This document shows positions 25,338 through 35,640 of a stretch of 64,000 nucleotides of DNA, piece by piece. The notes below the pieces were generated by a model. It ran no database searches. It saw nothing but the letters and a program-made list of their open reading frames with translations, and was not told where the DNA came from. The stretch is from assembly GCA_000388065.2 (NCBI GenBank), contig KB932205.1. One strand, 5' to 3'. The DNA is from Fonticula alba ATCC 38817 (Eukaryota > Protista > Nucleariida). How positions within the stretch are numbered: the first letter of the stretch is position 1; each line of letters starts with the position of its first letter. The position numbers were made by a program, and so were the translations under genes.

Positions 25338-27845
25338 ATGATGGCCACGCCAAACGGGCCAAGCCCGGTGCCGGCCTTCTTCCGCGACGCGCCGCAGCGG
25401 ACTCCCCTCGACGCGGTGGGCGCCGCCGCCCCGGCAGTGGGGGAGTTTCTGGCCCCAGCAGCCGGGTCCCCGGCGGCGGCCTTCGACTCCGCCTCCTTGG
25501 CGGTGGTGGTCTTCCCTTCGGATTCCCGAGTGGCCGGGCATCTGTTCGAGGCGCGCACCCTCTGTGGCAGTCTCTCGGCCCTGTGGACGCAACGCCCCAG
25601 GGCCGGGGACAGGACATCTGCCGTACCGGGCTCCGACCTGGTTTGCGACACCTGCTCGCAGGCGTGCGTCACCCTGCCCGGGGTGGACGCCGGTGGCGGG
25701 GCCGACGCTCCACCGGCCCCGGGACGCTTCCTCTCGGAACCGGGGCTCGGGGTGACAGCGGTGCCAGAGGCGCCGGCCCGGGCGATCTCCGACCCGACGC
25801 CGGACACCGGGTCTCCCGGCGCCGGGCTCGCTCTGTCGCCGCTGCTGGATGACATCTTCTCCACGGCCAATCGCCTGGCTTTGTCCTTCGAGCCGGATGA
25901 AATTGCCGCCCTCAGCCATGTGTTCCTGCAGCTTGGTCGCGAGCTGGATGGCTCGGGTGCGCTTGCGAGTGTCCACACTCGCCCGGTCACGCTCCTGTGC
26001 CTTTTTTTGTCCCCCCCCCCCCGGCCGGCCACTGGCTTGAGCTGGAGCCCATTTTCCTCGCGCTGACACATGTCCAAAGACACCGTTTCCACCACCCTCT
26101 GCCCGACGGACCTGAGCAACTCCTCGGTCGCCGAGCGGCCAATTGTCCTGAAGCCACAGCGGTCATATGTGCACCATCGCCATGCGGCGGCCGCCGTGGT
26201 GGCCCTGGGGACTCGACGTGCAACCGGCTACGGTCCGGGGCCCCTGTCCGGGGCGTCCTCCTCGCCGGCCCTGCAGTCGCTGCCGACCATCTCCCTGCAT
26301 CTTGGCGGGGCCGGGCCATCGGCCTCGGCAGCCTCGGCCTCGGCCTCGGCCTCGGCGGCTTCCTCCACCCCGGCAGGCTCTCTGCCCTCTTCTTCCTTCC
26401 CGGCAATCACCGTGGACCCCCAGTCGCCGGGTCTCGGTAGTGCCAGCAGCTCGCCGGCTCTCGGGCCGATCGCCCAGGCGACTGGCGGCCAGTCGCCGAC
26501 CGCCTCCATCCCCGGGGCCCTGTCCACATCAGGCTCCTCCTCGTCGCTGGTGGTGCCAGGCCTGTCGTCCGGCTCGTCGCCGCTTTCCACCACGGCGCCG
26601 GTGGGGGCCCCAGCCGCCGGGGCCACCAGTGGAGGCCCCGGGCGCGCTGCCTACCCAAGCCTCGGCCTGGCGCCGCTGTCGATCTCCTCCCTGCCGGGCT
26701 TCAGCGGGTCGCACCCGTCCATCTCGAATCTCAGCACGCCTCGGTCATCGGCTCTCTCCGGCGGGTCGTCCCCACTCCTGGCGTCTTTTTCATCGGTGGA
26801 GTTGCTTCCGCCCCTGTCCGGGGTATGGTCACTTCCTGCGCATGGGTGTAGGAGGGCTTTCTTGCCTTGCGTGTTGCTGCAATTCTGACCTCCCTCATGC
26901 ATTCGCCGATGCTCCCCGCGTGTCCTGCCTCTCCTACGCGCAGCCCATGTCTCTGGTCGTGGCCAAGTGCGGCCCGGTGGCTGTGGCCGTGGTTGCCTGT
27001 CACAGCGCACTCCCGACGCCGGTGGGCGCGGACGCCGTTCCCGGCCCCGGTGGGCGTCCTGGCGCTGGCGGCGTGTCCCTGGCCAAGTCCTGCGCCTCCT
27101 CGCCGGATCATCTGCACGACGCCTTCCGGCGCCTCCTCCTGCACCGGCTGGCCATCCCCGCGGCGCAGGTGTTCGCTGCCCAGTGGCATGCGGATGTTTT
27201 GCGTGCCGTGTCGGCCGGCCTGCCGGATGAAGTACGTCGCCTGTCCAGCTCCATTCCTGCCACTCCTCTGCCCTTGGCTTCCATGCGCCGGGACTGACGG
27301 CCCGTGCCTTTCTCCTCTCGCCGCCGGGCTCGGTGTCTCTTGCTCTTGTCCCCTTTTTTTTTCCCCGGCTTCCGGTCCCTTCTCGATGTCGGGCATAGCG
27401 CCTGGCCGATGACACTCCGCTGCATTTCCGGGACTTCCACGCGGACATCTCCCTCCTTCTTGGCCGAGCGGCCGGGCTGAATGCCTTCCGGTTCCCGCTG
27501 ATCCGGCCCATTCCCTTGTTGCTGCCCTCGGGCTTCCGCCGGGTCTCGTGGTTCCCGGTGGATGATGTGCTTGACAGCCTTTCGGCTCTGTCGCTGGAGG
27601 CGGACTATTTTGACCGGCAGGTGACCGGCGTCGGTGGGGCCCCTGCGGCTGGGAGCGCCCCCCGGCTGCGTTTCTCCCATCGGTGCCAGTGCGCCGCGCT
27701 GACGGAGGCCATCGACGCCGGGTTGGCCTCGGCGCCGCGGCCCCCGCCGCCGGAGGCCGCCACCGATGAGGACGCCCACTTGCTGGCCCTCAGCGGGGGA
27801 TCCCATCGATCCATGTCGACTTGTTCCTTCACAACAGCCATCTGA
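25338..27845 (+). CDS. Hypothetical Ser/Ala/Pro-rich protein, about 4 exons
   Basis: Coding-like exons bounded by GT..AG: LLDDIFSTANRLALSFEPDEIAALSHVFLQLGRELDG; a long S-rich exon; PMSLVVAKCGPVAVAVVACH...HDAFRRLLLHRLAIPAAQVFAAQWHADVLRAV; RLADDTPLHFRDFHADISLLLG...FTTAI*. No family recognised. The start codon is uncertain (alternative ATG near 25157). Confidence 0.6.
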
Positions 27846-27971
27846 TTTGCCTCGGCCCCGGGCGGGCACGCAATGCACCGGTCCAAATGCCCACCCTCGG
27901 CCTGCCTGTCGCTTCTTGTCTTCTCCATCATCCCGGACTTGCCGGCAATTGGGTCACAGGGGGAGAGGTAT

Positions 27972-29649
27972 CTATTGGAAGTGGAGGTCTCGAGTCGGGC
28001 CCGGACACTGTGATCGGCTGGATCCCCCGGGAGAGTCCGCCGGCTCGAAGTGATCCATGCACCAGATGCAAAATGTGTGACGCCTGCGAAGATGTTCATT
28101 CACCTCGCTCAGGCGATCCGCCACCTGGGAAGCGGCATGGACAGCGATTAGTAGGGGGAGGGGGGGGGGGCAAAGGGGAGGCCACCGGAATCCGGCATGA
28201 TGTAGGGGAGAAGGAAAAGGGAAGAAAAAGAGGAAGCGGCGTGTACCTCAAGCGCCTCGAAGACCGAGCATCCGGATACTCCGATGCGGCATGGCGGCCC
28301 GGTGGCAGTGGGCGGGTCTCCAGGCAAAGGCTCCGACGGGGCGGCCCCCATGCTGGCTTCGGGCATATCACTGGCAGTTCCACCCTGGGCAGTGGCCACA
28401 GTGGCAACTTCCGGGGCGGTGGCAAGCATGTCGGCCTTCGAGAGCGCGGCCGGCTCGCCAATCTCCGACGGGGCATCGGCCTCGCCTTCGGAGTCCCGGG
28501 GGGAAGCCCGACCATTGGCTTCGGTGGGGGGAGCCACCTCCCCGGGGGCTGGGCTTCCTGGGCCGGAGGCGACATCGCAGTGGAGGCAGGTGTCCGGAGG
28601 CGTTGGGATCTCCTGCACTGAGGTGAATCTTTTCGCCCAGAGGATCGGCCAGAGACACGATGGTGGGATGTTCTGCGGCGAGGGGGGCAGGTGAGGAAGG
28701 GGCAACTGATTACGGGGGATCGGGGAAGCAGGGAGGAGCGAGGCAAAGGGCCGGGGAAAAGGGCCACCGGCACGGGGACATACCTGCTTCAGGTCCAGAC
28801 GGAAGCACAGCTTACGGGCGGCGCGCTCATCGTTGGCGTCCTGCCGGGAGCTTCGAGCCTGGAAAACCCGCTCGGCATAGTGTGCCGGTTCGGCGGGCAT
28901 GGAGGAATCGGCCGCCGCGTCGGCCACAAACGGCGCGGCCAGTTCGTCCATGCCAAAGCCCAGCCCCAGACGATGGCCCACTGCCGGGATGCCAGGAGCG
29001 GGGATGTGAGTCGGACGAGGGGACAAACGGCGCAAGGGGGGGGGGGGGGGCCGAGGGTGGCTCGTACGCACGTTCAAACCGATCGAGGTCTACCTGGATG
29101 GGCGCAGGGGGGATGGCACTTGAGGAGGCGCCGCCAGGCGGGGCTCCCACCACTCCGGAAAAGATGGAATCGCCTCCGGGCTTCGGGGCCGTTTCTCCAT
29201 ACAGCAGTCTGAAGCCCTTGTTGTCGCTCTGCAGGGGCTTCTGCATGCCATCGCGGAGGGCGTCCATGGCTCGCTCGGCCAGGGGCAGCGTGCGCGCTGG
29301 GCCGCTACGGCATGCCCGAAGAGAGGAAGGACCGGTCAGCGCCATGGCAAGGGGGAAAGGGGAGGAGCAGGAAGGCTGGGCTCCAGTCGGCATACCGCTT
29401 TTTGGTGACCATTTTGGCGGGGCGTCGCCCGGTCAGCGACCGGGACTTCTGCAAGGCATCTTCAGCGGCCTGGAGCACCGCGTCCGACATGTAATCCAAC
29501 TCCTCCTCGCTCGAGGAATCCCGCTCGGCCGAGGGGTCCATGGCTGTGGCGCCTCCGAGGGCGGATGGCGGAAGAGCGGGGTACTCCGCCGGGGGAGGCG
29601 GCCAGGTGTTCTCCTGGCCCGGACTCGAGGGCGGCGACGAGTCAAACAT
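27972..29649 (-). CDS. GPATCH11: G-patch domain protein 11 (CCDC75)-like with DUF4187
   Basis: N-terminal EEELDYMSDAVL, central DGMQKPLQSDNKGFRLL, and last exon VADRLSEVNEHLRRRHTFCIWCMDHF...SQCPGPTRDLHFQ*, matching the DUF4187 pattern YLR..H.YC.WC...CPG.T...H. Confidence 0.8.
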
Positions 29650-30717
29650 CCGCGAGTATGTATGAGTCAAGGCGGCAGAGCGAGCAACGAAGGAGGCAGA
29701 GGACTGGAGACAAGGGGAGAGGCGCGGTACTGGCAACCAAAATGCGCTTGTGGCAGCAGGGTCGCCACTCTTGCCATGTGCGGGAGTGGGAGCAGGTGGA
29801 GGGCAGATGGTGGCTCTCCGGGTGAGAGGGAGGGGGCCGTGCCGGCGGGGCGGCATCCGGGCTTGTTTTATTTTTTTTTCCCAACTCCCCTCTGACCGGA
29901 TTGCATTCCTGGCGAGGGGTGATCGGCGAGCAGGCCCGCATGTGACGCATCACGAGGCGGCATGATCCCGGAGCACATAAATGCCATTCCAATCGTTACT
30001 ATTTGAAAATCCACCCACATCGCCAGGGCCGACCAGGGGCACCGCCCCGGGAGCCGGGGGGATCGGGACAGGAAATCCGTGGCGCCTGACAATCTGCATG
30101 GTGGCATGCTAGTAGTGTCTACCTGCCTGGGATCCTACGCTGGCTGGGGTATTGCACGCATAGGTGGGCGAGGGGGGGGGGGGGGGGGGGGGGCCGGACC
30201 GGGGCGGGGTGGCACGCCGCCGGGGGATCGGCCAGACCCCTGCCAATTCCCCGGTACTCGCGGGGCTGGCTCCCGCGGCGCCCCCCCTCCTCGTTCCCGG
30301 GGCCGGGGCCCGAGAGGAAGAGCCCGGTGGGGCCCGTTGCCCGTTGCCGAGCAGGCGGAAGCCGGGCCAGGGCGCTGGGGAGCTGCCACCTGAGCGCCCG
30401 GCAGCCAGATCGCCGCTCTGGGGAGGGGGGGGGGGGGGGGGGGGCCGGGCGGCTCCAGGCGAAAACCCCGGGGGGGGGGCACTTATCAGGAAGGACGCGG
30501 CGGGCTCTCGGAGCCTCCAACGGCCAGATCCTGCCTCCCCCACCCTCTGCGCCGCTCCCGCCTCCGCTTATTTGGCTGACCGCCAAAGAAAAACATTTGC
30601 CCCGGCGCGCCCCGCATTCGCACAGACACACACACACACACACCCAGTCCATATATATCTCCCTCTCGCTCTCCCCTTCTTCGTTCCTCCCCCCTCCCCC
30701 CCGCGCCCCGGCCCGAC

Positions 30718-33700
30718 ATGACCGCCTTGGCCACCATGCGCGCCGAGCTGGCTGCGCAGCTCCCCGAGACCGGGACTGCCAGCCTCGGAGACCACTTCTG
30801 CCTTGTGGAGCAGGAGTCTCCGGCCGAGGCGGACTTCATCCTGGAGGAGCATTTCCCGGTCCTGTCCGGCGCCGAGATCGGGGCTGCCCACTTGACCGAG
30901 GGGTTCTTCGATCCGCGCAGCCCGGCGCTTGTGCGGCTCCGCACGCCGGTCCGCCCGGGCGCGGCCCCGATGGCCGATCGCCACCCGCTGGCCGCGCACC
31001 TTGCGCTGGCCCATCTCGAGGAGGGGTTCTTCGACCCGCGCAGCCCGTCGGCCGTGGTGCACCGGACCCCGGTCAAGCCTGGTACCATGGCCGAGGCCCC
31101 GGCCACTCCGAGCCCCCCGGTCCCCGAGCCGTCGGGGGTCGCTGCGGCCACCGCGCGCATGGCCTCGGCCGATCTGGATGAGGGCTTTTTCGACCCGCGC
31201 AGCCCGGCCATCCTCCTTCACCGGACTCCGGTTCGGCCGCTGGACAAGCCGACGGTCCACGCGGCGCGCATGGCCTCGGCCCAGCTGGAAGATGGTTTCT
31301 TTGATCCCCGTAGCCCGGCGGCCGTGTTGCACCGGACCCCGGTCCGTCCGGGCGGTGCTGCTGCCCCTGCACCGGGGGCCTCTGTCCACCCGGGGCATGT
31401 GGCCCGGATGGCGTCGGCCGATTTGGCCGAGGGGTTCTTCGATCCGCGCAGCCCGGCGGCCGTGCTGCACCGGACCCCGGTGCGGCCGGCCACCACTGCC
31501 CCCGCCGTGGCCCCGGCCGATGGGTCTGTCCATGGTGCTGCGCGTTTGGCATCGGCCGAGCTGGAGGAGGGGTTCTTCGACCCGCGGAGCCCGGCGGCCG
31601 TGCTGCGTCGGACGCCGGTCCGGCCAGGCGCCACGGCCCCTGGGTCATCCATCCGCATGCACATTGCGCGCTTGGCGTCGGCCGACTTGGATGCCGGGTG
31701 CTTCGACCCGCGGAGCCCGTCGGCGGTGCTGAGCCGGACGCCGGTCCGCCCGGGCACGAGCCAGGCCGCATCCTCTCGGCGCCCGGCCACCGTCCACATC
31801 GCGCGCCTGGCTGCTGCCCACCTGGAGGAGGGGTTCTTCGACCCGCGGAGCCCGTCGGCGGTCCTGCACCGGACGCCGGTCCGGCCGGGCGAGCCCTCGG
31901 CCGCCTCCCTGGCCAGGGATCCGACCACGCCCCGCGCGCCCGCCACGGCCGTGGTGCGCCTGGCTGCGGCCCATCTGGAGGAGGGTTTCTTCGATCCCCG
32001 GAGCCCGACGGCTCTGGTTCACCGGACCCCGGTCCGGCCGGCCGAAGACCCGGTGCCCACCTTCATGGCAGACCCGACGGCCCTTGTCGCGCGCCTGGCC
32101 GCTGCTCGGCTGGAGGAGGGGTTCTTCGACCCGCGGAGCCCGTCGGCNNNNNNNNNNGTGCCCACCTTCATGGCAGACCCGACGGCCCTTGTCGCGCGCC
32201 TGGCCGCTGCTCGGCTGGAGGAGGGGTTCTTCGACCCGCGGAGCCCGTCGGCTGTCTTCCGTCGGACGCCGGTCCGGCCGGAGGGCCCTGCCCTCGCCGA
32301 GGCGCCGGTCACGACCAACCCCCGGGTGTACGAGGCCCGTCTGGCGTCGGGCGACCTGGATGAGGGCTTTTTCGACCCGCGGAGCCCGGCGGCCGTGCTG
32401 CACCGGACGCCAGTCCGGCCGGGCACGGCGGCCACTCTGCCGGGCCCCCACGTGGCGCACATGGCCTCGGCCCAGCTTGCTGATGGGTTCTTCGACCCGC
32501 GCAGTCCGGCGGCCGTGTTGCACCGGACGCCGGTCCGGCCAGGCACTGCCGCCCCGGCTGCCGCGGCCCCCCTGGCGCGTCTGGCCTCTGCCGACCTGGA
32601 GGCCGGGTTCTTCGATCCCCGGAGCCCATCGGCCGTGCTTCACCGGACGCCGGTCCGGCCGGGAGTGGCCCCGGTTGAGGCCAACCCCCGCGTGCATGCT
32701 GCGCGCCTGGCATCGGCCGACTTGGAGGCGGGGTTCTTCGACCCGCGTAGCCCGTCGGTGGTCATGCACCGGACTCCGGTTCGGCCGGCCGACCCGCCGG
32801 CCGCCATGCCGCCATCCACCGTGTGCCTGGCGTCGGCCGACCTGGAGGAGGGGTTCTTCGATCCGCGCAGTCCGACGGCCGTGCTGTGCCGGACGCCGGT
32901 CCGGCCGGCCGAGGCGGCCGCCGGTCCGGGCACGCCCTCCCCCCCGGCGGCCGCGCGCTTGGCATCGGCCGATCTGGCGGCCGGGTTCTTCGACCCGCGG
33001 AGCCCGACGGCCGTGCTGCACCGGACGCCGGTCCAGCCATCGTCGGCCGCCGCCCCGGGCTCGGATGCGGCCTTCGACCCGCGGAGCCCGTTGCTGGTCG
33101 TGCGCCGGACGCCGGTCAAGGTCTTCCGCTTTGGCACCGCCACCATGGTCGCCGAGGGGCCGGCCCCGGACGCGGTCAGCCCCGCGGCCACGGTTTGCTG
33201 GTCGCTGGAGCCCGTGGTGCCGGGTGTGCCTGATGCCGGGTCCGAGCCCCTCGAGCCCGGGATGGCGGACGCCGCCAAGCCCGAGCCGGAGGCCGTTTCG
33301 CTGCTGGTGCGCATGGCCTCGGCCGACCTGGATGAGGGGGCCTTCGATCCGCGCAGCCCGGCGGTCGTCCGCCGCCGGACGCCCGTCCGCCCGGCCGACA
33401 CACACACCGCCCCTGGGCCCGCCCCGGCCGAGGCGCCCACCACGCCGGCCCAACCAGCCGACCGGTCTCTCTACATCAGCATTGGGAGCTTGTCCCTCAT
33501 GCCGAGCCCAGGCCGCCTGTCGACCATGGACAGCGCGGCCGAGGAGGAGCTGCAGCTCCTGTCCCCGGCCGACGTTGCTGCCGTTGCGTTGCTGGCGACC
33601 AAGCCGACCGATGCCGCGGTCGCAGCTCCCTCCGACGAGACTGTCTCCGCCGAGGCTCCCGCCACAACGCCTGCCTCTGCCGAGTCCCCCACCGCAGAGT

Positions 33701-34795
33701 CCCCCACCGCGGAGTCCCCCACCGCGGAGTCCCCCACCGCGGAGGCCGCCAGCGCGGAGGCCCCTGCCGCGGAGGCCCCCGCCGTTTCCACTCCTAATGT
33801 CCCTGTCCGGCCCCTGGGGTCGCAGGTTCTTTTCAAACCAACTCTGGGCCTTTCCTCCCCGGCTGCGCCCCGGAAGAATGGTGCGTTCGTTGTGCTGCTC
33901 GCTGTCGAGCCCCTGCCGCGCCACAGACCGGCCCCCCCCCTGTGACTGTGATATTGACCCCTTGTGGATGTCCCTCCTTGTTTTTTTTCTTTCCTTTTTT
34001 TGCTATCCCCTCCTCCTCCCCCCCCCACTGCACGTAGCCACCTCGCATGGTACACCGACGACCGCTGGCGGCCGGTCGGGCTTCGTGCTGCCCGGGGTGA
34101 CCTCCAGTACGCCCAACCGGCGCCGCGCGCTGGGCCTGGACTCGAGTGCGGCTGGCGGCTCGCCGCTGGGCGCCAGTCCCTCGCGTCTGGCCACCGGCAC
34201 AGTGCTGCCCTTCAGTTCGCCGGCCGGTGGGGGGCCGGCGCCGGCCCTGGCCGCGCGTGCCCGGTCCCGGTCGACCCTTGGCCCGATGGTTCTGCCGTCG
34301 GCGGTTGCCGCGGACTCGCCGGCGGCCGGGGCCACATCGGCGGCGGGCACTTCGCGCCCGGGCATGCGGTCCTCCGGCCCCGGCGCCCTGGTGCCTGGGC
34401 GCCTGCAAATCGACACGACGCTGGCCGCTCGGGCCGCGGCCGCCACCGGCTCGCCGCGTGTCGACTCGACCACCACCCCCCGCGAGCCGCTGTCTGCCAC
34501 CGGCCCCCTCAGCGCCAACACCCTCTTCCCGGCGGCCCATGTGCAGCTTGGCGGCGTGGGCCAGGAGAATGCCGGGCCTGGGGGCTCCTTTGCCAGTGGT
34601 GCCGGCGCCGGCGCTGCCGCTGGCACCCCGGGCAAGAAGCTGGCCTCCGGTGCATCTGGTGGCACCCCGGGCATGAAGTTGGCCCCTGGCGGCGCCGGTC
34701 CGCTGGTGCCGGACCTGGTGGGGCGCGGTGTCGGTCGCACTCCCCTCACACCGCTCACCCTCACAGGCCCCGACTCGCCGCTCATCATCCGCTAG
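30718..34795 (+). CDS. About 1300-aa disordered protein with 18-19 DPRSP-x5-RTPV repeats (CDCA3/Tome-1-like motif), 2 exons
   Basis: Exon 1 30718-33880; GTGCGT..TAG intron 33881-34037 (phase 1 joins G+CC = Ala); exon 2 34038-34795. The repeats are conserved at protein level with synonymous variation, which supports real coding. Confidence 0.85.
30880..33390 (+). repeat. Intragenic protein repeat array, core (ARLAxAxL)EEGFFDPRSPxAVLHRTPVRP with variable A/P-rich spacers
   Basis: 19 DPRSP occurrences counted in the translation, one of them duplicated across the N-gap at 32148-32157. Units are roughly 38-52 aa. Confidence 0.95.
33676..33783 (+). repeat. 15-nt tandem repeat encoding (AESPT)n then AEAP/S variants
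   Basis: Four near-identical GAGTCCCCCACCGC(A/G)-type units followed by degenerate copies. Confidence 0.85.
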
Positions 34796-35640
34796 AGGGG
34801 CCATGGGACCCGTGGCGTCTCGCGCGCACATGTGCACGCGCCTCCCTCCCCTCCCCCCCCCCCCCTGCGCGAGATCTGCCCTCACCTCGTCCTGACCGCC
34901 CCCCCTCCGGTTTATCCTGCGCGCACGCCCTGGCGTGGCTGCGCCCCACATGTTTCCCGTCTTTCATTTCGCGTGCACATTCTTGCCCCCTCCCCCTCCC
35001 TCCCCCCGTGTATATACAGAGGTTCTGCCATCCTTTTTTTTTGTCTTGTGTCCCCGGCCGGTTACACGTCCCCGTCTCATGCGTCTCGGCCCAGCCGGTC
35101 CGATCGCGGCGCTTCCTGGGTCTACCCGTATCTGCCAACGAAAGAGGATCATGTGGCGGGCATCGCCGTTATCTTTTCAAATTTCCCTCGCGACCTTGGC
35201 CGTGGCTTCCTCCTGACTCGATCTCACGCCCGGGGAGGAGCGGAGGAAGCACCGAGGCGGGGGGAGAGGGGCGAGACAGGGGCAGACATTGTGGGCAGAT
35301 CGGAACACCGAGCCACAGTCGGCTTTCTCTCTGTCTCTCCTCCTCGCCTCTCGCCGTCCCCCCTCTCTCTCGGGCAGACAGGGATCCGGGATCGGATGGC
35401 TCGATGTCAAAATAAAAAAGCCCCAGCGGCGGAGGCGGCCCCCCCGGTCGGCACTCCTCTTCCCCCCCCCCCCCCCCCCACCCTTTCCGCAGTTGTCCTT
35501 GCCTGGCCTCCCCCCTCGCCTCACCCTCGCTCGCCTCCCCTTCTCTCCCCCTCTTTGTTTTTCTCTCTCCTCCTCTCTTCCCCTCCCCCCCCCCCCCATC
35601 TCATCAGCCACCACCCCACCGGGTCCCCCTAGACAGCATC

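What the first reader, a model, noticed from the sequence alone, without database searches (positions are those of the whole stretch)
30718..34795. Massively expanded CDCA3/Tome-1-like motif protein: 18-19 DPRSP-x5-RTPV cassettes
Seen: a low-complexity protein with 19 DPRSP motifs. 18 are followed exactly 5 residues later by RTPV, and 17 form T-P-V-[R/K]. Spacers vary freely while cores are conserved with synonymous changes, implying selection on the motif. The tail adds (ESPT)4 and many more S/T-P sites. Established: human CDCA3 carries two copies of this spacing (DPRSPSAGILRTPI, DPRSPTLGIARTPM), and T-P-x-R/K is the full CDK consensus. Inference: a multivalent CDK-responsive scaffold, ultrasensitive phospho-switch or decoy. 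I do not recall a protein with this copy number.
Basis: partly seen in the sequence, partly recalled or inferred. Interest (0 to 1): 0.85.

Follow-up and report, generated by a model that had tools for sequence, protein, structure and literature searches.

The report
Eighteen-copy CDCA3-type motif protein
This microbe, reportedly the slime-mould-like fungal relative Fonticula alba, makes a long floppy protein that repeats 18 times a short phosphorylation/docking signal found only 2-7 times in the cell-division protein CDCA3 and its uncharacterised relatives across eukaryotes; what reads the signal is unknown.

Summary
A transcribed, spliced two-exon gene (30718-33880 and 34038-34795) encodes a disordered protein of 1306 aa as assembled. 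It has 19 DPRSP motifs, and 18 of them are followed by x5-RTPV. The 19th abuts the 10-N gap. That gap is flanked by a perfect 95-nt duplicate in the same codon phase, which is almost certainly an unmerged contig overlap. The real protein is therefore probably 1271 aa with 18 copies, and the frame is kept either way.

The conserved unit is about 30 aa (ARLASADLEEGFF-DPRSP-xAVLH-RTPVRP). It is under purifying selection (dN/dS 0.21, with synonymous variation at invariant residues).

A profile of the repeats found 156 proteins among 1.84 billion. These include named vertebrate CDCA3 and uncharacterised proteins of a tunicate, an annelid, a beetle, Amoebozoa and a diplomonad. Each carries 2-7 copies, so 18 is the record in that library.

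The Fonticula protein lacks the family's other hallmarks: the myristoylation-type MG start, the C-terminal KEN box and the small size.

Function is inferred, not shown. I read it as a multivalent array of paired proline-directed phosphosites. T-P-V-R/K is a full CDK consensus in 17 of 18 copies. The most likely reader or eraser is an SCP-type CTD phosphatase, a reported CDCA3 partner.

The scan noted this stretch twice before.

The parts
30718..33880 (+). Exon 1 of the coding sequence (ATG at 30718; ends one base into a split codon)
   Evidence: Longest ORF in this frame. No ATG lies in the 300 nt upstream. RNA contigs cover about 30989-33879.
33881..34037 (+). Intron, 157 nt, GT..AG
   Evidence: Joint 33879/34037 (cut +1) appears in RNA contigs of runs X4 and X6 and not in DNA contigs. 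The orientation shows + strand transcription.
34038..34795 (+). Exon 2, S/T/P/G/A-rich tail, stop at 34793-34795
   Evidence: The spliced CDS is 3921 nt = 1306 codons with a single terminal stop. RNA contigs cover 34037-34837.
30868..33399 (+). Array of 18 repeat units (spacing 28-90 aa, mostly 40-53). Each has a 32-aa core with consensus xARLASADLEEGFFDPRSPxAVLHRTPVRPGx.
   Evidence: Alignment A1 has 10 invariant columns. TRF periods are 105-153 nt at 70-79% identity.
30868..30963 (+). Repeat core 1
30991..31086 (+). Repeat core 2
31150..31245 (+). Repeat core 3
31261..31356 (+). Repeat core 4
31399..31494 (+). Repeat core 5
31537..31632 (+). Repeat core 6
31663..31758 (+). Repeat core 7
31798..31893 (+). 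Repeat core 8
31951..32046 (+). Repeat core 9
32053..32147 (+). Left copy of the 95-nt flank duplicate, carrying the truncated 19th DPRSP. Probably the same DNA as 32158-32252.
32148..32157 (.). Assembly gap (10 N)
32191..32286 (+). Repeat core 10 (its first part lies in the right copy of the flank duplicate, 32158-32252)
32332..32427 (+). Repeat core 11
32452..32547 (+). Repeat core 12
32572..32667 (+). Repeat core 13
32698..32793 (+). Repeat core 14
32818..32913 (+). Repeat core 15
32950..33045 (+). Repeat core 16 (RTPVQ: the one copy without R/K after TPV)
33034..33129 (+). Repeat core 17. It is degenerate: only the F-DPRSP-x5-RTPV half is kept.
33304..33399 (+). Repeat core 18, separated from core 17 by 90 aa
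33682..33784 (+). 15-nt micro-repeat encoding (ESPTA)4 followed by (EA[AP][SA]A) units
   Evidence: TRF reports period 15, 6.9 copies.
34562..34570 (+). QEN, the only xEN triplet. There is no true KEN box anywhere.
34736..34780 (+). C-terminal RTPL-x8-DSP, superficially like the RSPL..NSP box of animal CDCA3
   Evidence: The regex hit is rare in shuffles (0.4%). An HMM of the animal box does not score it above shuffles (180 of 2000 shuffles score at least as well). Unproven.

Best explanation
Shown. This is a real, expressed two-exon gene. It encodes an intrinsically disordered protein of about 1271 aa, or 1306 aa as assembled. Two thirds of the protein is a tandem array of 18 units. Each unit keeps a core of about 30 aa under purifying selection, and the linkers drift freely. 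The C-terminal half of the core, F-DPRSP-x-x-[VL]-[LV]-x-RTP-V, is the same short linear motif that defines vertebrate CDCA3/Tome-1 (2 copies). The motif also defines a largely unnamed family with 2-7 copies, found in animals, Amoebozoa and a diplomonad.

Inferred. Each unit is a pair of proline-directed phosphorylation sites: P-x-S-P, and R-T-P-V-R/K, the latter a full CDK consensus in 17 of 18 units. The protein would then work as a multivalent, phosphorylation-controlled docking platform or high-capacity competing substrate for whatever conserved factor reads the CDCA3 motif.

My most likely assignment is CDK (or another proline-directed kinase) as writer and an FCP/SCP-type small CTD phosphatase as reader or eraser. 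Human CDCA3 was reported as an SCP1/CTDSP1 partner and substrate. Scp1 grips x-P-x-pS with the proline in a hydrophobic pocket. F-D-P-R-S-P-S also resembles the RNA polymerase II CTD heptad Y-S-P-T-S-P-S. Eighteen sites on one chain would give avidity, sequestration or a graded/ultrasensitive response.

Rough odds: multivalent phospho-SLiM array about 0.6; CDK as writer about 0.5; SCP-type phosphatase as the conserved reader about 0.25.
For: Gene reality: RNA contigs cover the gene, and the 157-nt GT..AG intron is removed in two RNA runs. The same runs have zero coverage on the flanking intergenic stretches 29880-30033 and 30342-30803.

Selection: over the family motif pS is 0.375 against pN 0.10, giving dN/dS 0.21. 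Invariant D, R, S, P and T use several codons.

Disorder: AF2 gives pLDDT 31 and no secondary structure. There is no Pfam domain. Composition is A 19%, P 14%.

Family: 156 hits at E<=0.001 in 1.84 billion proteins, matching profile positions of about 14-29, with 2-7 copies. Sources name CDCA3 and hypothetical proteins of Ciona, Phallusia, Owenia, Brassicogethes, Dictyostelium, Tieghemostelium, Cavenderia, Squamamoeba, Stygamoeba and Spironucleus. The reciprocal HMM scores the whole protein at 337 bits.

CDK consensus: 21 [ST]P.[KR] sites, 17 of them in the repeats.

Phosphorylation precedent: human CDCA3 S29 is a recorded phosphosite (PMC13731270). Residue 29 is the DPRSP serine in the collinear turtle orthologue.

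SCP link: CDCA3 is listed as a CTDSP1 partner/substrate (Kim & Bahk 2014, as cited in PMC7281111 and PMC6594944). CTDSP1 is among STRING's top 20 CDCA3 partners (PMC10489371). Scp1 binds Ser2-Pro3-Thr4-pSer5 with Pro3 in a hydrophobic pocket, and a phage-selected binder needs F-V-F-x-P (PMC11011526).
Against: No phosphorylation, binding or phenotype data exist for this protein or for any non-vertebrate family member. The function of the motif in CDCA3 itself is not described in the papers I could read.

The basic residue after T-P-x is not conserved in the family, so CDK need not be the ancestral writer. The Cks1 docking consensus (hydrophobic residue at -2 of pT) is not met.

The SCP1-CDCA3 report could not be read directly, and it does not map the interaction to the DPRSP motif. 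The CTD resemblance is my own reading of 5 of 7 positions.

The Fonticula-specific N-terminal half of the core (ARLASADLEEGFF) is unexplained by this model. Position 5 after DPRSP is Ala in 8 of 18 units, unlike Ser7 of the CTD.
Confidence: 0.55

Rival explanations
1. True CDCA3/Tome-1 orthologue doing the published Tome-1 job. It would be an F-box-like adaptor that joins Skp1/SCF to Wee1 to trigger mitotic entry and is itself destroyed by APC/C-Cdh1. The repeat expansion would be a lineage quirk.
For: It shares the family's defining motif. A C-terminal RTPL-x8-DSP lies where animal CDCA3 has RSPL..NSP, and the regex hit is rare in shuffles. Cdca3 is needed for timely Cdk1 activation in Xenopus oocytes (PMC13662394).
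Against: There is no KEN box (only QEN), no MG start, and the protein is 4-5 times the family size. An HMM of the animal C-terminal box does not score above shuffles. No similarity outside the motif was found. The motif-bearing family reaches lineages where the vertebrate C-terminal region is absent.
Confidence: 0.12
2. Degron array or SCF pseudosubstrate. Each unit starts with [DE][DE]G-F-F-D, a phosphorylation-independent DDG-type beta-TrCP degron like those of CDC25A/B and CReP. The protein would then be an extremely unstable substrate, or a competitive inhibitor, of a beta-TrCP-like F-box protein. DPRSP phosphorylation next door would modulate binding.
For: 10 of 18 units match [DE][DE]G..D, and 13 of 18 match x[DE]G..D. 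The beta-TrCP consensus DpSGX(1-4)pS tolerates acidic substitutions, and DDG degrons are validated in CDC25A/B and CReP (PMC4474599). An earlier scan note, s1-066632, raised the same idea.
Against: Five units have Ala before the Gly, so the acidic pair is not under strict selection. The acidic-G-F-F part is not a general family feature, although GFF occurs sporadically, for example in Spironucleus P0027. The presence of a beta-TrCP orthologue in Fonticula was not tested.
Confidence: 0.1
3. Runaway tandem expansion with little added function. One or a few motif copies do the family's normal job, and the rest are tolerated passengers kept similar by their recent common origin.
For: Disordered repeat proteins expand easily. 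Copy number already varies from 2 to 7 in the family. Units 16-18 are degenerate or irregularly spaced.
Against: The repeats are old (synonymous divergence about 0.5 per site; longest shared exact run 38 nt), yet the core has dN/dS 0.21 while linkers differ in length and sequence. Ten columns are invariant in all 18 units. That pattern requires selection on each copy.
Confidence: 0.1
4. FFAT-like VAP-binding array. An acidic tract plus F-F-D would tether the protein to ER VAP proteins.
For: D-L-E-E-G-F-F-D-P-R-S superficially resembles an acidic tract followed by E-F-F-D-A-x-E (FFAT consensus from general knowledge).
Against: Position 1 is Gly and position 5 is Pro instead of Ala. The rest of the family usually has a single hydrophobic residue before DPRSP. 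The invariant part (DPRSP...RTPV) is unexplained by this model.
Confidence: 0.03
5. Not a protein. The ORF would be a by-product of a GC-rich DNA satellite or an assembly artefact.
For: GC is 68%, so long ORFs appear in several frames and on both strands. One unit is an assembly duplicate.
Against: The locus is transcribed and spliced in the + orientation. Conservation is frame-specific with synonymous changes. The motif matches real proteins of many eukaryotes. Independent DNA runs of another isolate hold near-identical sequence (X8).
Confidence: 0.02

Closest known systems
Vertebrate CDCA3 / Tome-1 (e.g. turtle P0129, fishes P0095 and P0140)
   Same: It has the same motif with the same spacing: [hydrophobic]-DPRSP-[ST]-x-x-[IVL]-x-RTP-[IVLM]. 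It is disordered and has no Pfam domain. The proline-directed Ser of the motif is a recorded phosphosite in human (S29).
   Different: CDCA3 has 2 copies, is about 230-430 aa, has an MG (myristoylation-type) start, an RSPL..NSP box and a C-terminal KEN box. The Fonticula protein has 18 copies and about 1271 aa, starts MTALA, and has no KEN. It adds an extra conserved ARLASADLEEGFF half-unit and a basic residue after T-P-V.
Uncharacterised multi-copy family members: Tieghemostelium DLAC_10438 (7 copies), Cavenderia DFA_03889, Dictyostelium purpureum DICPUDRAFT_85169 (6), Ciona LOC100176363 (4), Spironucleus SS50377_24322 (2)
   Same: They are tandem arrays of the same motif in otherwise low-complexity proteins. 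Spironucleus even shares G-F-F-DPRSP-T-A-V-x-x-RTP.
   Different: They have at most 7 copies. Most start with MGxxxS/T. Dictyostelid copies often have K-R-S-P instead of R-T-P.
[quoted passage not shown]
   Same: It is a tandem, disordered array of proline-directed phosphosites. F-D-P-R-S-P-S matches the heptad at P3, S5, P6 and S7, with aromatic F for Y1. Scp1 reads x-P-x-pS. CDCA3 is a reported Scp1 partner.
   Different: The Fonticula units are about 45 aa apart rather than contiguous heptads. They carry a second invariant R-T-P-V element. No evidence links the protein to transcription. The resemblance is inferred.
Multisite CDK substrates (Sic1, Cdc25, Wee1 type)
   Same: It has many S/T-P sites in a disordered chain, 21 of them with the full S/T-P-x-K/R consensus.
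   Different: Those proteins have irregular, non-homologous sites. Here the sites sit in 18 near-identical selected modules, which argues for a specific reader of the whole motif rather than bulk charge.
Multivalent disordered scaffolds with repeated binding peptides (CsoS2 was the top, weak, language-model neighbour)
   Same: The architecture is the same: repeated short conserved peptide, variable linkers, no fold.
   Different: There is no sequence relationship (score 0.67, below the tool's lead threshold). CsoS2 is bacterial and binds Rubisco.

Membership tests
CDCA3/Tome-1-type motif family | Two or more copies of [hydrophobic]-DPRSP-x5-RTP-[ILVM] | tested here: met
   There are 18 copies. 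The Fonticula profile finds the family, including named CDCA3. The family HMM scores each copy at 15.9-27 bits against a shuffle maximum of 8.
CDCA3/Tome-1-type motif family | N-terminal MGxxx[S/T] (N-myristoylation-type start) | tested here: not met
   94 of 147 M-initiated hits have it. The Fonticula model starts MTALATM, there is no upstream ATG within 300 nt, and no upstream exon is seen in RNA contigs. 5' coverage is thin, so a missed exon is not excluded.
CDCA3/Tome-1-type motif family | C-terminal KEN box (animal members) | tested here: not met
   There is no KEN in the protein, only one QEN. Many animal members end in KEN.
CDCA3/Tome-1-type motif family | RSPL..NSP box (F-box-like region of Tome-1) | tested here: inconclusive
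   Regex match at 34736-34780, found in 0.4% of shuffles. An HMM of 14 animal boxes gives -0.6 bits, matched or beaten by 180 of 2000 shuffles.
CDCA3/Tome-1-type motif family | Similarity outside the motif / comparable size (about 100-650 aa) | tested here: not met
   There are no full-length relatives. The protein is 1271-1306 aa against 75-830 aa for the hits.
Multisite CDK substrate | Clustered S/T-P sites with the full S/T-P-x-K/R consensus | tested here: met
   35 SP, 31 TP and 21 [ST]P.[KR] sites.
Multisite CDK substrate | Actual cell-cycle-dependent phosphorylation | not testable with these tools
   No Fonticula phosphoproteome is available here.
FCP/SCP (small CTD phosphatase) substrate | x-P-x-pS-P element fitting the Scp1 groove (Ser2-Pro3-Thr4-pSer5) | tested here: met
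   D-P-R-S-P is invariant in 18 of 18 units. The Scp1 recognition rule is from PMC11011526. This is a sequence match only.
FCP/SCP (small CTD phosphatase) substrate | Physical binding or dephosphorylation by an SCP-type enzyme | not testable with these tools
   There is only second-hand literature for human CDCA3.
beta-TrCP DDG-type degron | [DE][DE]G-x-x-[DE/pS] | tested here: inconclusive
   10 of 18 units match fully, and 5 have Ala at the second acidic position. The presence of the F-box protein in the genome was not tested.
FFAT motif | Acidic tract followed by E-F-F-D-A-x-E | tested here: not met
   The units read G-F-F-D-P-R-S: Gly at position 1 and Pro at position 5.

The most novel reading that the evidence does not exclude
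DPRSP-x5-RTP is an ancient, pan-eukaryotic docking signal that mimics the CTD heptad and is read by FCP/SCP-type phosphatases or another CTD reader. It is normally carried by small N-myristoylated proteins, of which CDCA3 is the vertebrate survivor. Fonticula has turned it into an 18-unit cytoplasmic 'pseudo-CTD' that soaks up or times the phosphatase against CDK and so sets a threshold for a cell-cycle or developmental transition.
Probability: 0.15. Interest if true: 0.85.

Novelty: new variant of a known kind. Interest (0 to 1): 0.58.

Why it matters
CDCA3/Tome-1 is a much-cited mitotic-entry and cancer marker protein. The papers I could read treat only its C-terminal degrons and F-box-like region. 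The twin N-terminal DPRSP...RTP motifs have no assigned reader.

This work shows that those motifs are the most conserved feature of the protein. They define a family that reaches Amoebozoa and a diplomonad, usually with a myristoylation-type start. One organism has amplified the unit to 18 selected copies.

Such an array is a natural high-avidity bait. It could be used to fish out the conserved reader, and so to test whether CDCA3 acts through an SCP-type phosphatase rather than, or besides, SCF-Wee1.

The array is also a clean natural example of selection on every copy of a short linear motif in a disordered chain.

Tried and rejected
- Pfam on three pieces of the protein and on ten family members found no family.
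- The word-indexed homologue search with the whole ORF found nothing. It was swamped by low-complexity candidates.
- A profile search of PDB sequences found no solved chain with the motif; the best E was 0.5, a chance hit.
- The ESM Atlas feature search gave only weak neighbours (0.67; CsoS2, coagulase repeats). They serve as an analogy of architecture only.
- AF2 on four to five repeats gave no structure (pLDDT 31), so no fold search was run.
- The C-terminal RSPL..NSP homology was rejected as proven after the HMM/shuffle test.
- Gap closure from reads failed. All runs are kept as Logan contigs, which break at the repeated 31-mers (ends at 32138 and 32223), and the tool masks the duplicate.
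- A search for an upstream MG-encoding exon found none in RNA contigs.
- Cks1, 14-3-3, Polo-box, FHA, PP1 RVxF, B56 LxxIxE, calcineurin PxIxIT and p107-type B55 motifs were compared by eye with the family consensus. None fits. These consensus patterns are from general knowledge.
- A full-text search for 'DPRSP' gave 13 papers, none about this motif.
- The primary SCP1-CDCA3 paper (PubMed 24769477) and the Scp1-CTD structure paper are not held.


Full report
WHAT IS THERE

The window is GC-rich (67.6%). According to earlier notes of this scan it belongs to Fonticula alba. I did not verify the organism independently.

An ORF starts at the first ATG, 30718, and runs to 33945. RNA contigs of two runs remove a 157-nt GT..AG intron (33881-34037). 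This joins the ORF in frame to a second exon that ends at the stop at 34793-34795. It is 3921 nt, or 1306 codons, as assembled.

The same RNA libraries give zero coverage on the neighbouring intergenic stretches 29880-30033 and 30342-30803. They give clean spliced contigs for the upstream minus-strand gene. The signal is therefore RNA and not contaminating DNA. The intron orientation fixes the + strand. The long ORFs in other frames and on the minus strand are by-products of GC content.

THE GAP

As assembled there are 19 DPRSP motifs. Eighteen are followed after exactly five residues by RTPV, and the odd one abuts the 10-N gap.

- The 95 nt before the gap (32053-32147) are identical to the 95 nt after it (32158-32252). 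The identity begins and ends exactly at the gap edges.
- Elsewhere in the array, no two units share more than 38 identical nucleotides in a row.
- Of nine gaps in the window, this is the only one of the minimal length of 10 N. It is also the only one with a long flank duplicate; one other shows a 12-nt match.

This is the signature of two contig ends that overlap but were not merged.

Both copies start at codon position 1, and the period is 105 nt, or 35 codons. The reading frame is therefore continuous as assembled, and it stays continuous after merging. Merging gives 1271 aa with 18 of 18 DPRSP-x5-RTPV and 17 of 18 T-P-V-R/K.

Read-level proof was not possible. All runs are held as Logan contigs, and these stop inside the repeated 31-mers. 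I put about 0.85 on 18 units. A larger hidden number is not excluded.

THE REPEAT UNIT

Aligning the 18 units shows a conserved core of about 30 aa. Its consensus is xARLASADLEEGFFDPRSPxAVLHRTPVRPGx. Ten columns are invariant (F, DPRSP, RTPV) and five more are conserved in at least 90% of units.

Units are 28-90 aa apart, mostly 40-53 aa. Their linkers differ in both length and sequence.

Across all pairs of units, the family-motif part has pS 0.375 against pN 0.10, giving dN/dS 0.21. Invariant residues use several codons each. The copies are therefore old, and each one is held by selection at the protein level rather than by DNA homogenisation.

AlphaFold2 on four to five units gives pLDDT 31 and no secondary structure. 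Pfam finds nothing. The protein is 19% Ala and 14% Pro. This is a disordered chain carrying a short-linear-motif array.

RELATIVES

A word-indexed search with the whole ORF failed. An exhaustive HMMER search with the 32-column profile against 1.84 billion representative proteins found 156 proteins at E<=0.001. The best was 7e-20, and none was below 1e-30.

The matches fall on profile positions of about 14-29, with 2-7 stretches per protein. From 437 unique instances the family consensus is:
- [F/L/I] at position -1;
- DPRSP;
- S/T (81%);
- x;
- G/E/N/D;
- I/V/F (79%);
- x;
- R-T-P (83-87%);
- I/L/V.

The five-residue spacing holds in 380 of 437 instances. Copy numbers among the best 150 hits are 2 (58 proteins), 3 (53), 4 (25), 5 (7), 6 (2) and 7 (4). 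Three hits (P0034, P0053, P0081) look unrelated, because their FDPRSP lies in other repeat contexts.

Names given by the sources:
- uncharacterised proteins of Ciona, Phallusia, Owenia and the beetle Brassicogethes;
- uncharacterised proteins of the dictyostelids Tieghemostelium, Dictyostelium purpureum and Cavenderia;
- uncharacterised proteins of the amoebozoans Squamamoeba and Stygamoeba;
- an uncharacterised protein of the diplomonad Spironucleus salmonicida.

The reciprocal test is clean. An HMM built only from 382 foreign motif instances scores all 18 Fonticula units at 15.9-27.0 bits, and the whole protein at 337 bits. The best single hit in 1000 composition-preserving shuffles is 8.0 bits.

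MEMBERSHIP

The family has other hallmarks that this protein lacks.
- 94 of 147 complete hits begin with a myristoylation-type MGxxxS/T. The Fonticula model begins MTALATM, and neither an upstream ATG nor an upstream exon is visible.
- Many animal members end in a KEN box. Fonticula has none, only one QEN.
- Animal CDCA3 has an RSPL..NSP box. Fonticula ends with RTPL-x8-DSP, which matches a permissive regex that is rare in shuffles (0.4%). I wrote that regex after seeing the sequence. An HMM of the animal box does not beat shuffles.

I therefore treat the protein as a new, highly expanded variant that carries the family's motif. I do not treat it as a demonstrated orthologue of Tome-1.

HOW IT MAY WORK

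What is shown is the architecture: 18 selected copies of a bipartite motif with an invariant P-R-S-P and an invariant R-T-P-V on a floppy chain. The rest is inference.

Both elements are proline-directed kinase sites. P-x-S-P is the classic MAPK/CDK form. T-P-V-R/K is the full CDK consensus, but the basic residue is specific to Fonticula. In human CDCA3, S29 is a recorded phosphosite (PMC13731270). Residue 29 is the DPRSP serine in the collinear turtle sequence.

The only motif-compatible partner I found in the literature is the small CTD phosphatase SCP1/CTDSP1.
- CDCA3 came out of a proteomic screen of SCP1 binding partners (Kim & Bahk 2014, cited in PMC7281111 and PMC6594944).
- CTDSP1 is the one non-mitotic-machinery protein among STRING's top 20 CDCA3 partners (PMC10489371).
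- Scp1 holds its substrate through Ser2-Pro3-Thr4-pSer5, with Pro3 in a hydrophobic pocket. A selected high-affinity binder needs F-V-F-x-P (PMC11011526).

D-P-R-S-P preceded by F-F fits that description. F-D-P-R-S-P-S also reads like the CTD heptad Y-S-P-T-S-P-S. FCP/SCP phosphatases are universal in eukaryotes (general knowledge), which matches the reach of the family.

I therefore favour an array written by CDK (or MAPK) and read or erased by an SCP-type phosphatase. It could act as scaffold, sponge or multistep timer.

Two things remain unexplained. One is the second element, R-T-P-V. The other is the Fonticula-specific acidic-aromatic half, ARLASADLEEGFF. The latter could be an added DDG-type beta-TrCP degron, because [DE][DE]G..D occurs in 10 of 18 units and acidic substitutions are tolerated in validated DDG degrons (PMC4474599). 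Five units have Ala there, however.

KNOWN OR NEW

No paper in the searchable library mentions the DPRSP motif in this sense. [quoted passage not shown] One paper states that no CdcA3 homologue was identified in the genome of one fungus, Magnaporthe oryzae (PMC6594944). The Fonticula array is a new variant of a known motif-bearing kind. The wide distribution of the family and its MG start seem not to have been described, as far as these searches reach.

The scan had already noted this same stretch twice (s1-065470 and s1-066632).

LIMITS

- The organism's identity rests on earlier notes.
- The gap is not closed by reads.
- The 5' end has thin RNA coverage.
- There are no functional data.
- The SCP1 evidence is second-hand and is not mapped to the motif.
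- Human CDCA3 sequence details other than what the turtle orthologue shows are from memory.

Noticed in passing
window 30034-30341: In all four RNA runs the contig word depth is about 600 at 30034-30187 and about 165 at 30188-30341. The neighbouring gene has about 27 and the flanks have 0. The stretch lies between two genes and holds a long poly-G (30166-30194). There is no Rfam family at gathering score, only a chance-level ar7 hit (E 0.16). It may be an abundant small RNA, or an artefact of G-run contigs laid here.
   Followed up: partly
window 27959-29820 (minus strand): A well-expressed five-exon gene on the minus strand, with introns at about 28123-28244, 28673-28783, 28981-29071 and 29305-29395 (CT..AC on the + strand). 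It is seen as one spliced RNA contig in all four runs. Its product was not analysed.
   Followed up: no
window 26822-27893 (plus strand): A spliced + strand transcript with GT..AG introns at about 26822-26942 and 27232-27398. It was not analysed.
   Followed up: no
proteins P0001-P0150; e.g. P0027 Spironucleus, P0001 Tieghemostelium, P0121 Squamamoeba: The DPRSP-x5-RTP motif defines a family far wider than vertebrate CDCA3, reaching Amoebozoa and a diplomonad. 94 of 147 complete members start with a myristoylation-type MGxxxS/T. Insect members share a distinct C-terminus (C-E-N-T-P-P ... W-D ... T-L-[VI]-I).
   Followed up: partly
window 30630-30645 and 30420-30480: A (CA)n microsatellite and long poly-G/poly-C runs lie in the putative promoter/5' UTR just upstream of the start codon. 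RNA and DNA contigs break there.
   Followed up: no
window 31822-34842, run X8 (organism B, 2025) and soil metagenomes X3, X14: DNA of a second, differently labelled source holds this gene at near identity. There are a few single-base differences, for example 33042 G>C (synonymous) and 33667 A>G (Thr to Ala in the tail). The array is therefore stable between isolates, and the organism occurs in soil metagenomes.
   Followed up: partly
window 12030 (minus strand): One further DPRSP in a six-frame scan, without the RTP partner. It is probably a chance match.
   Followed up: no
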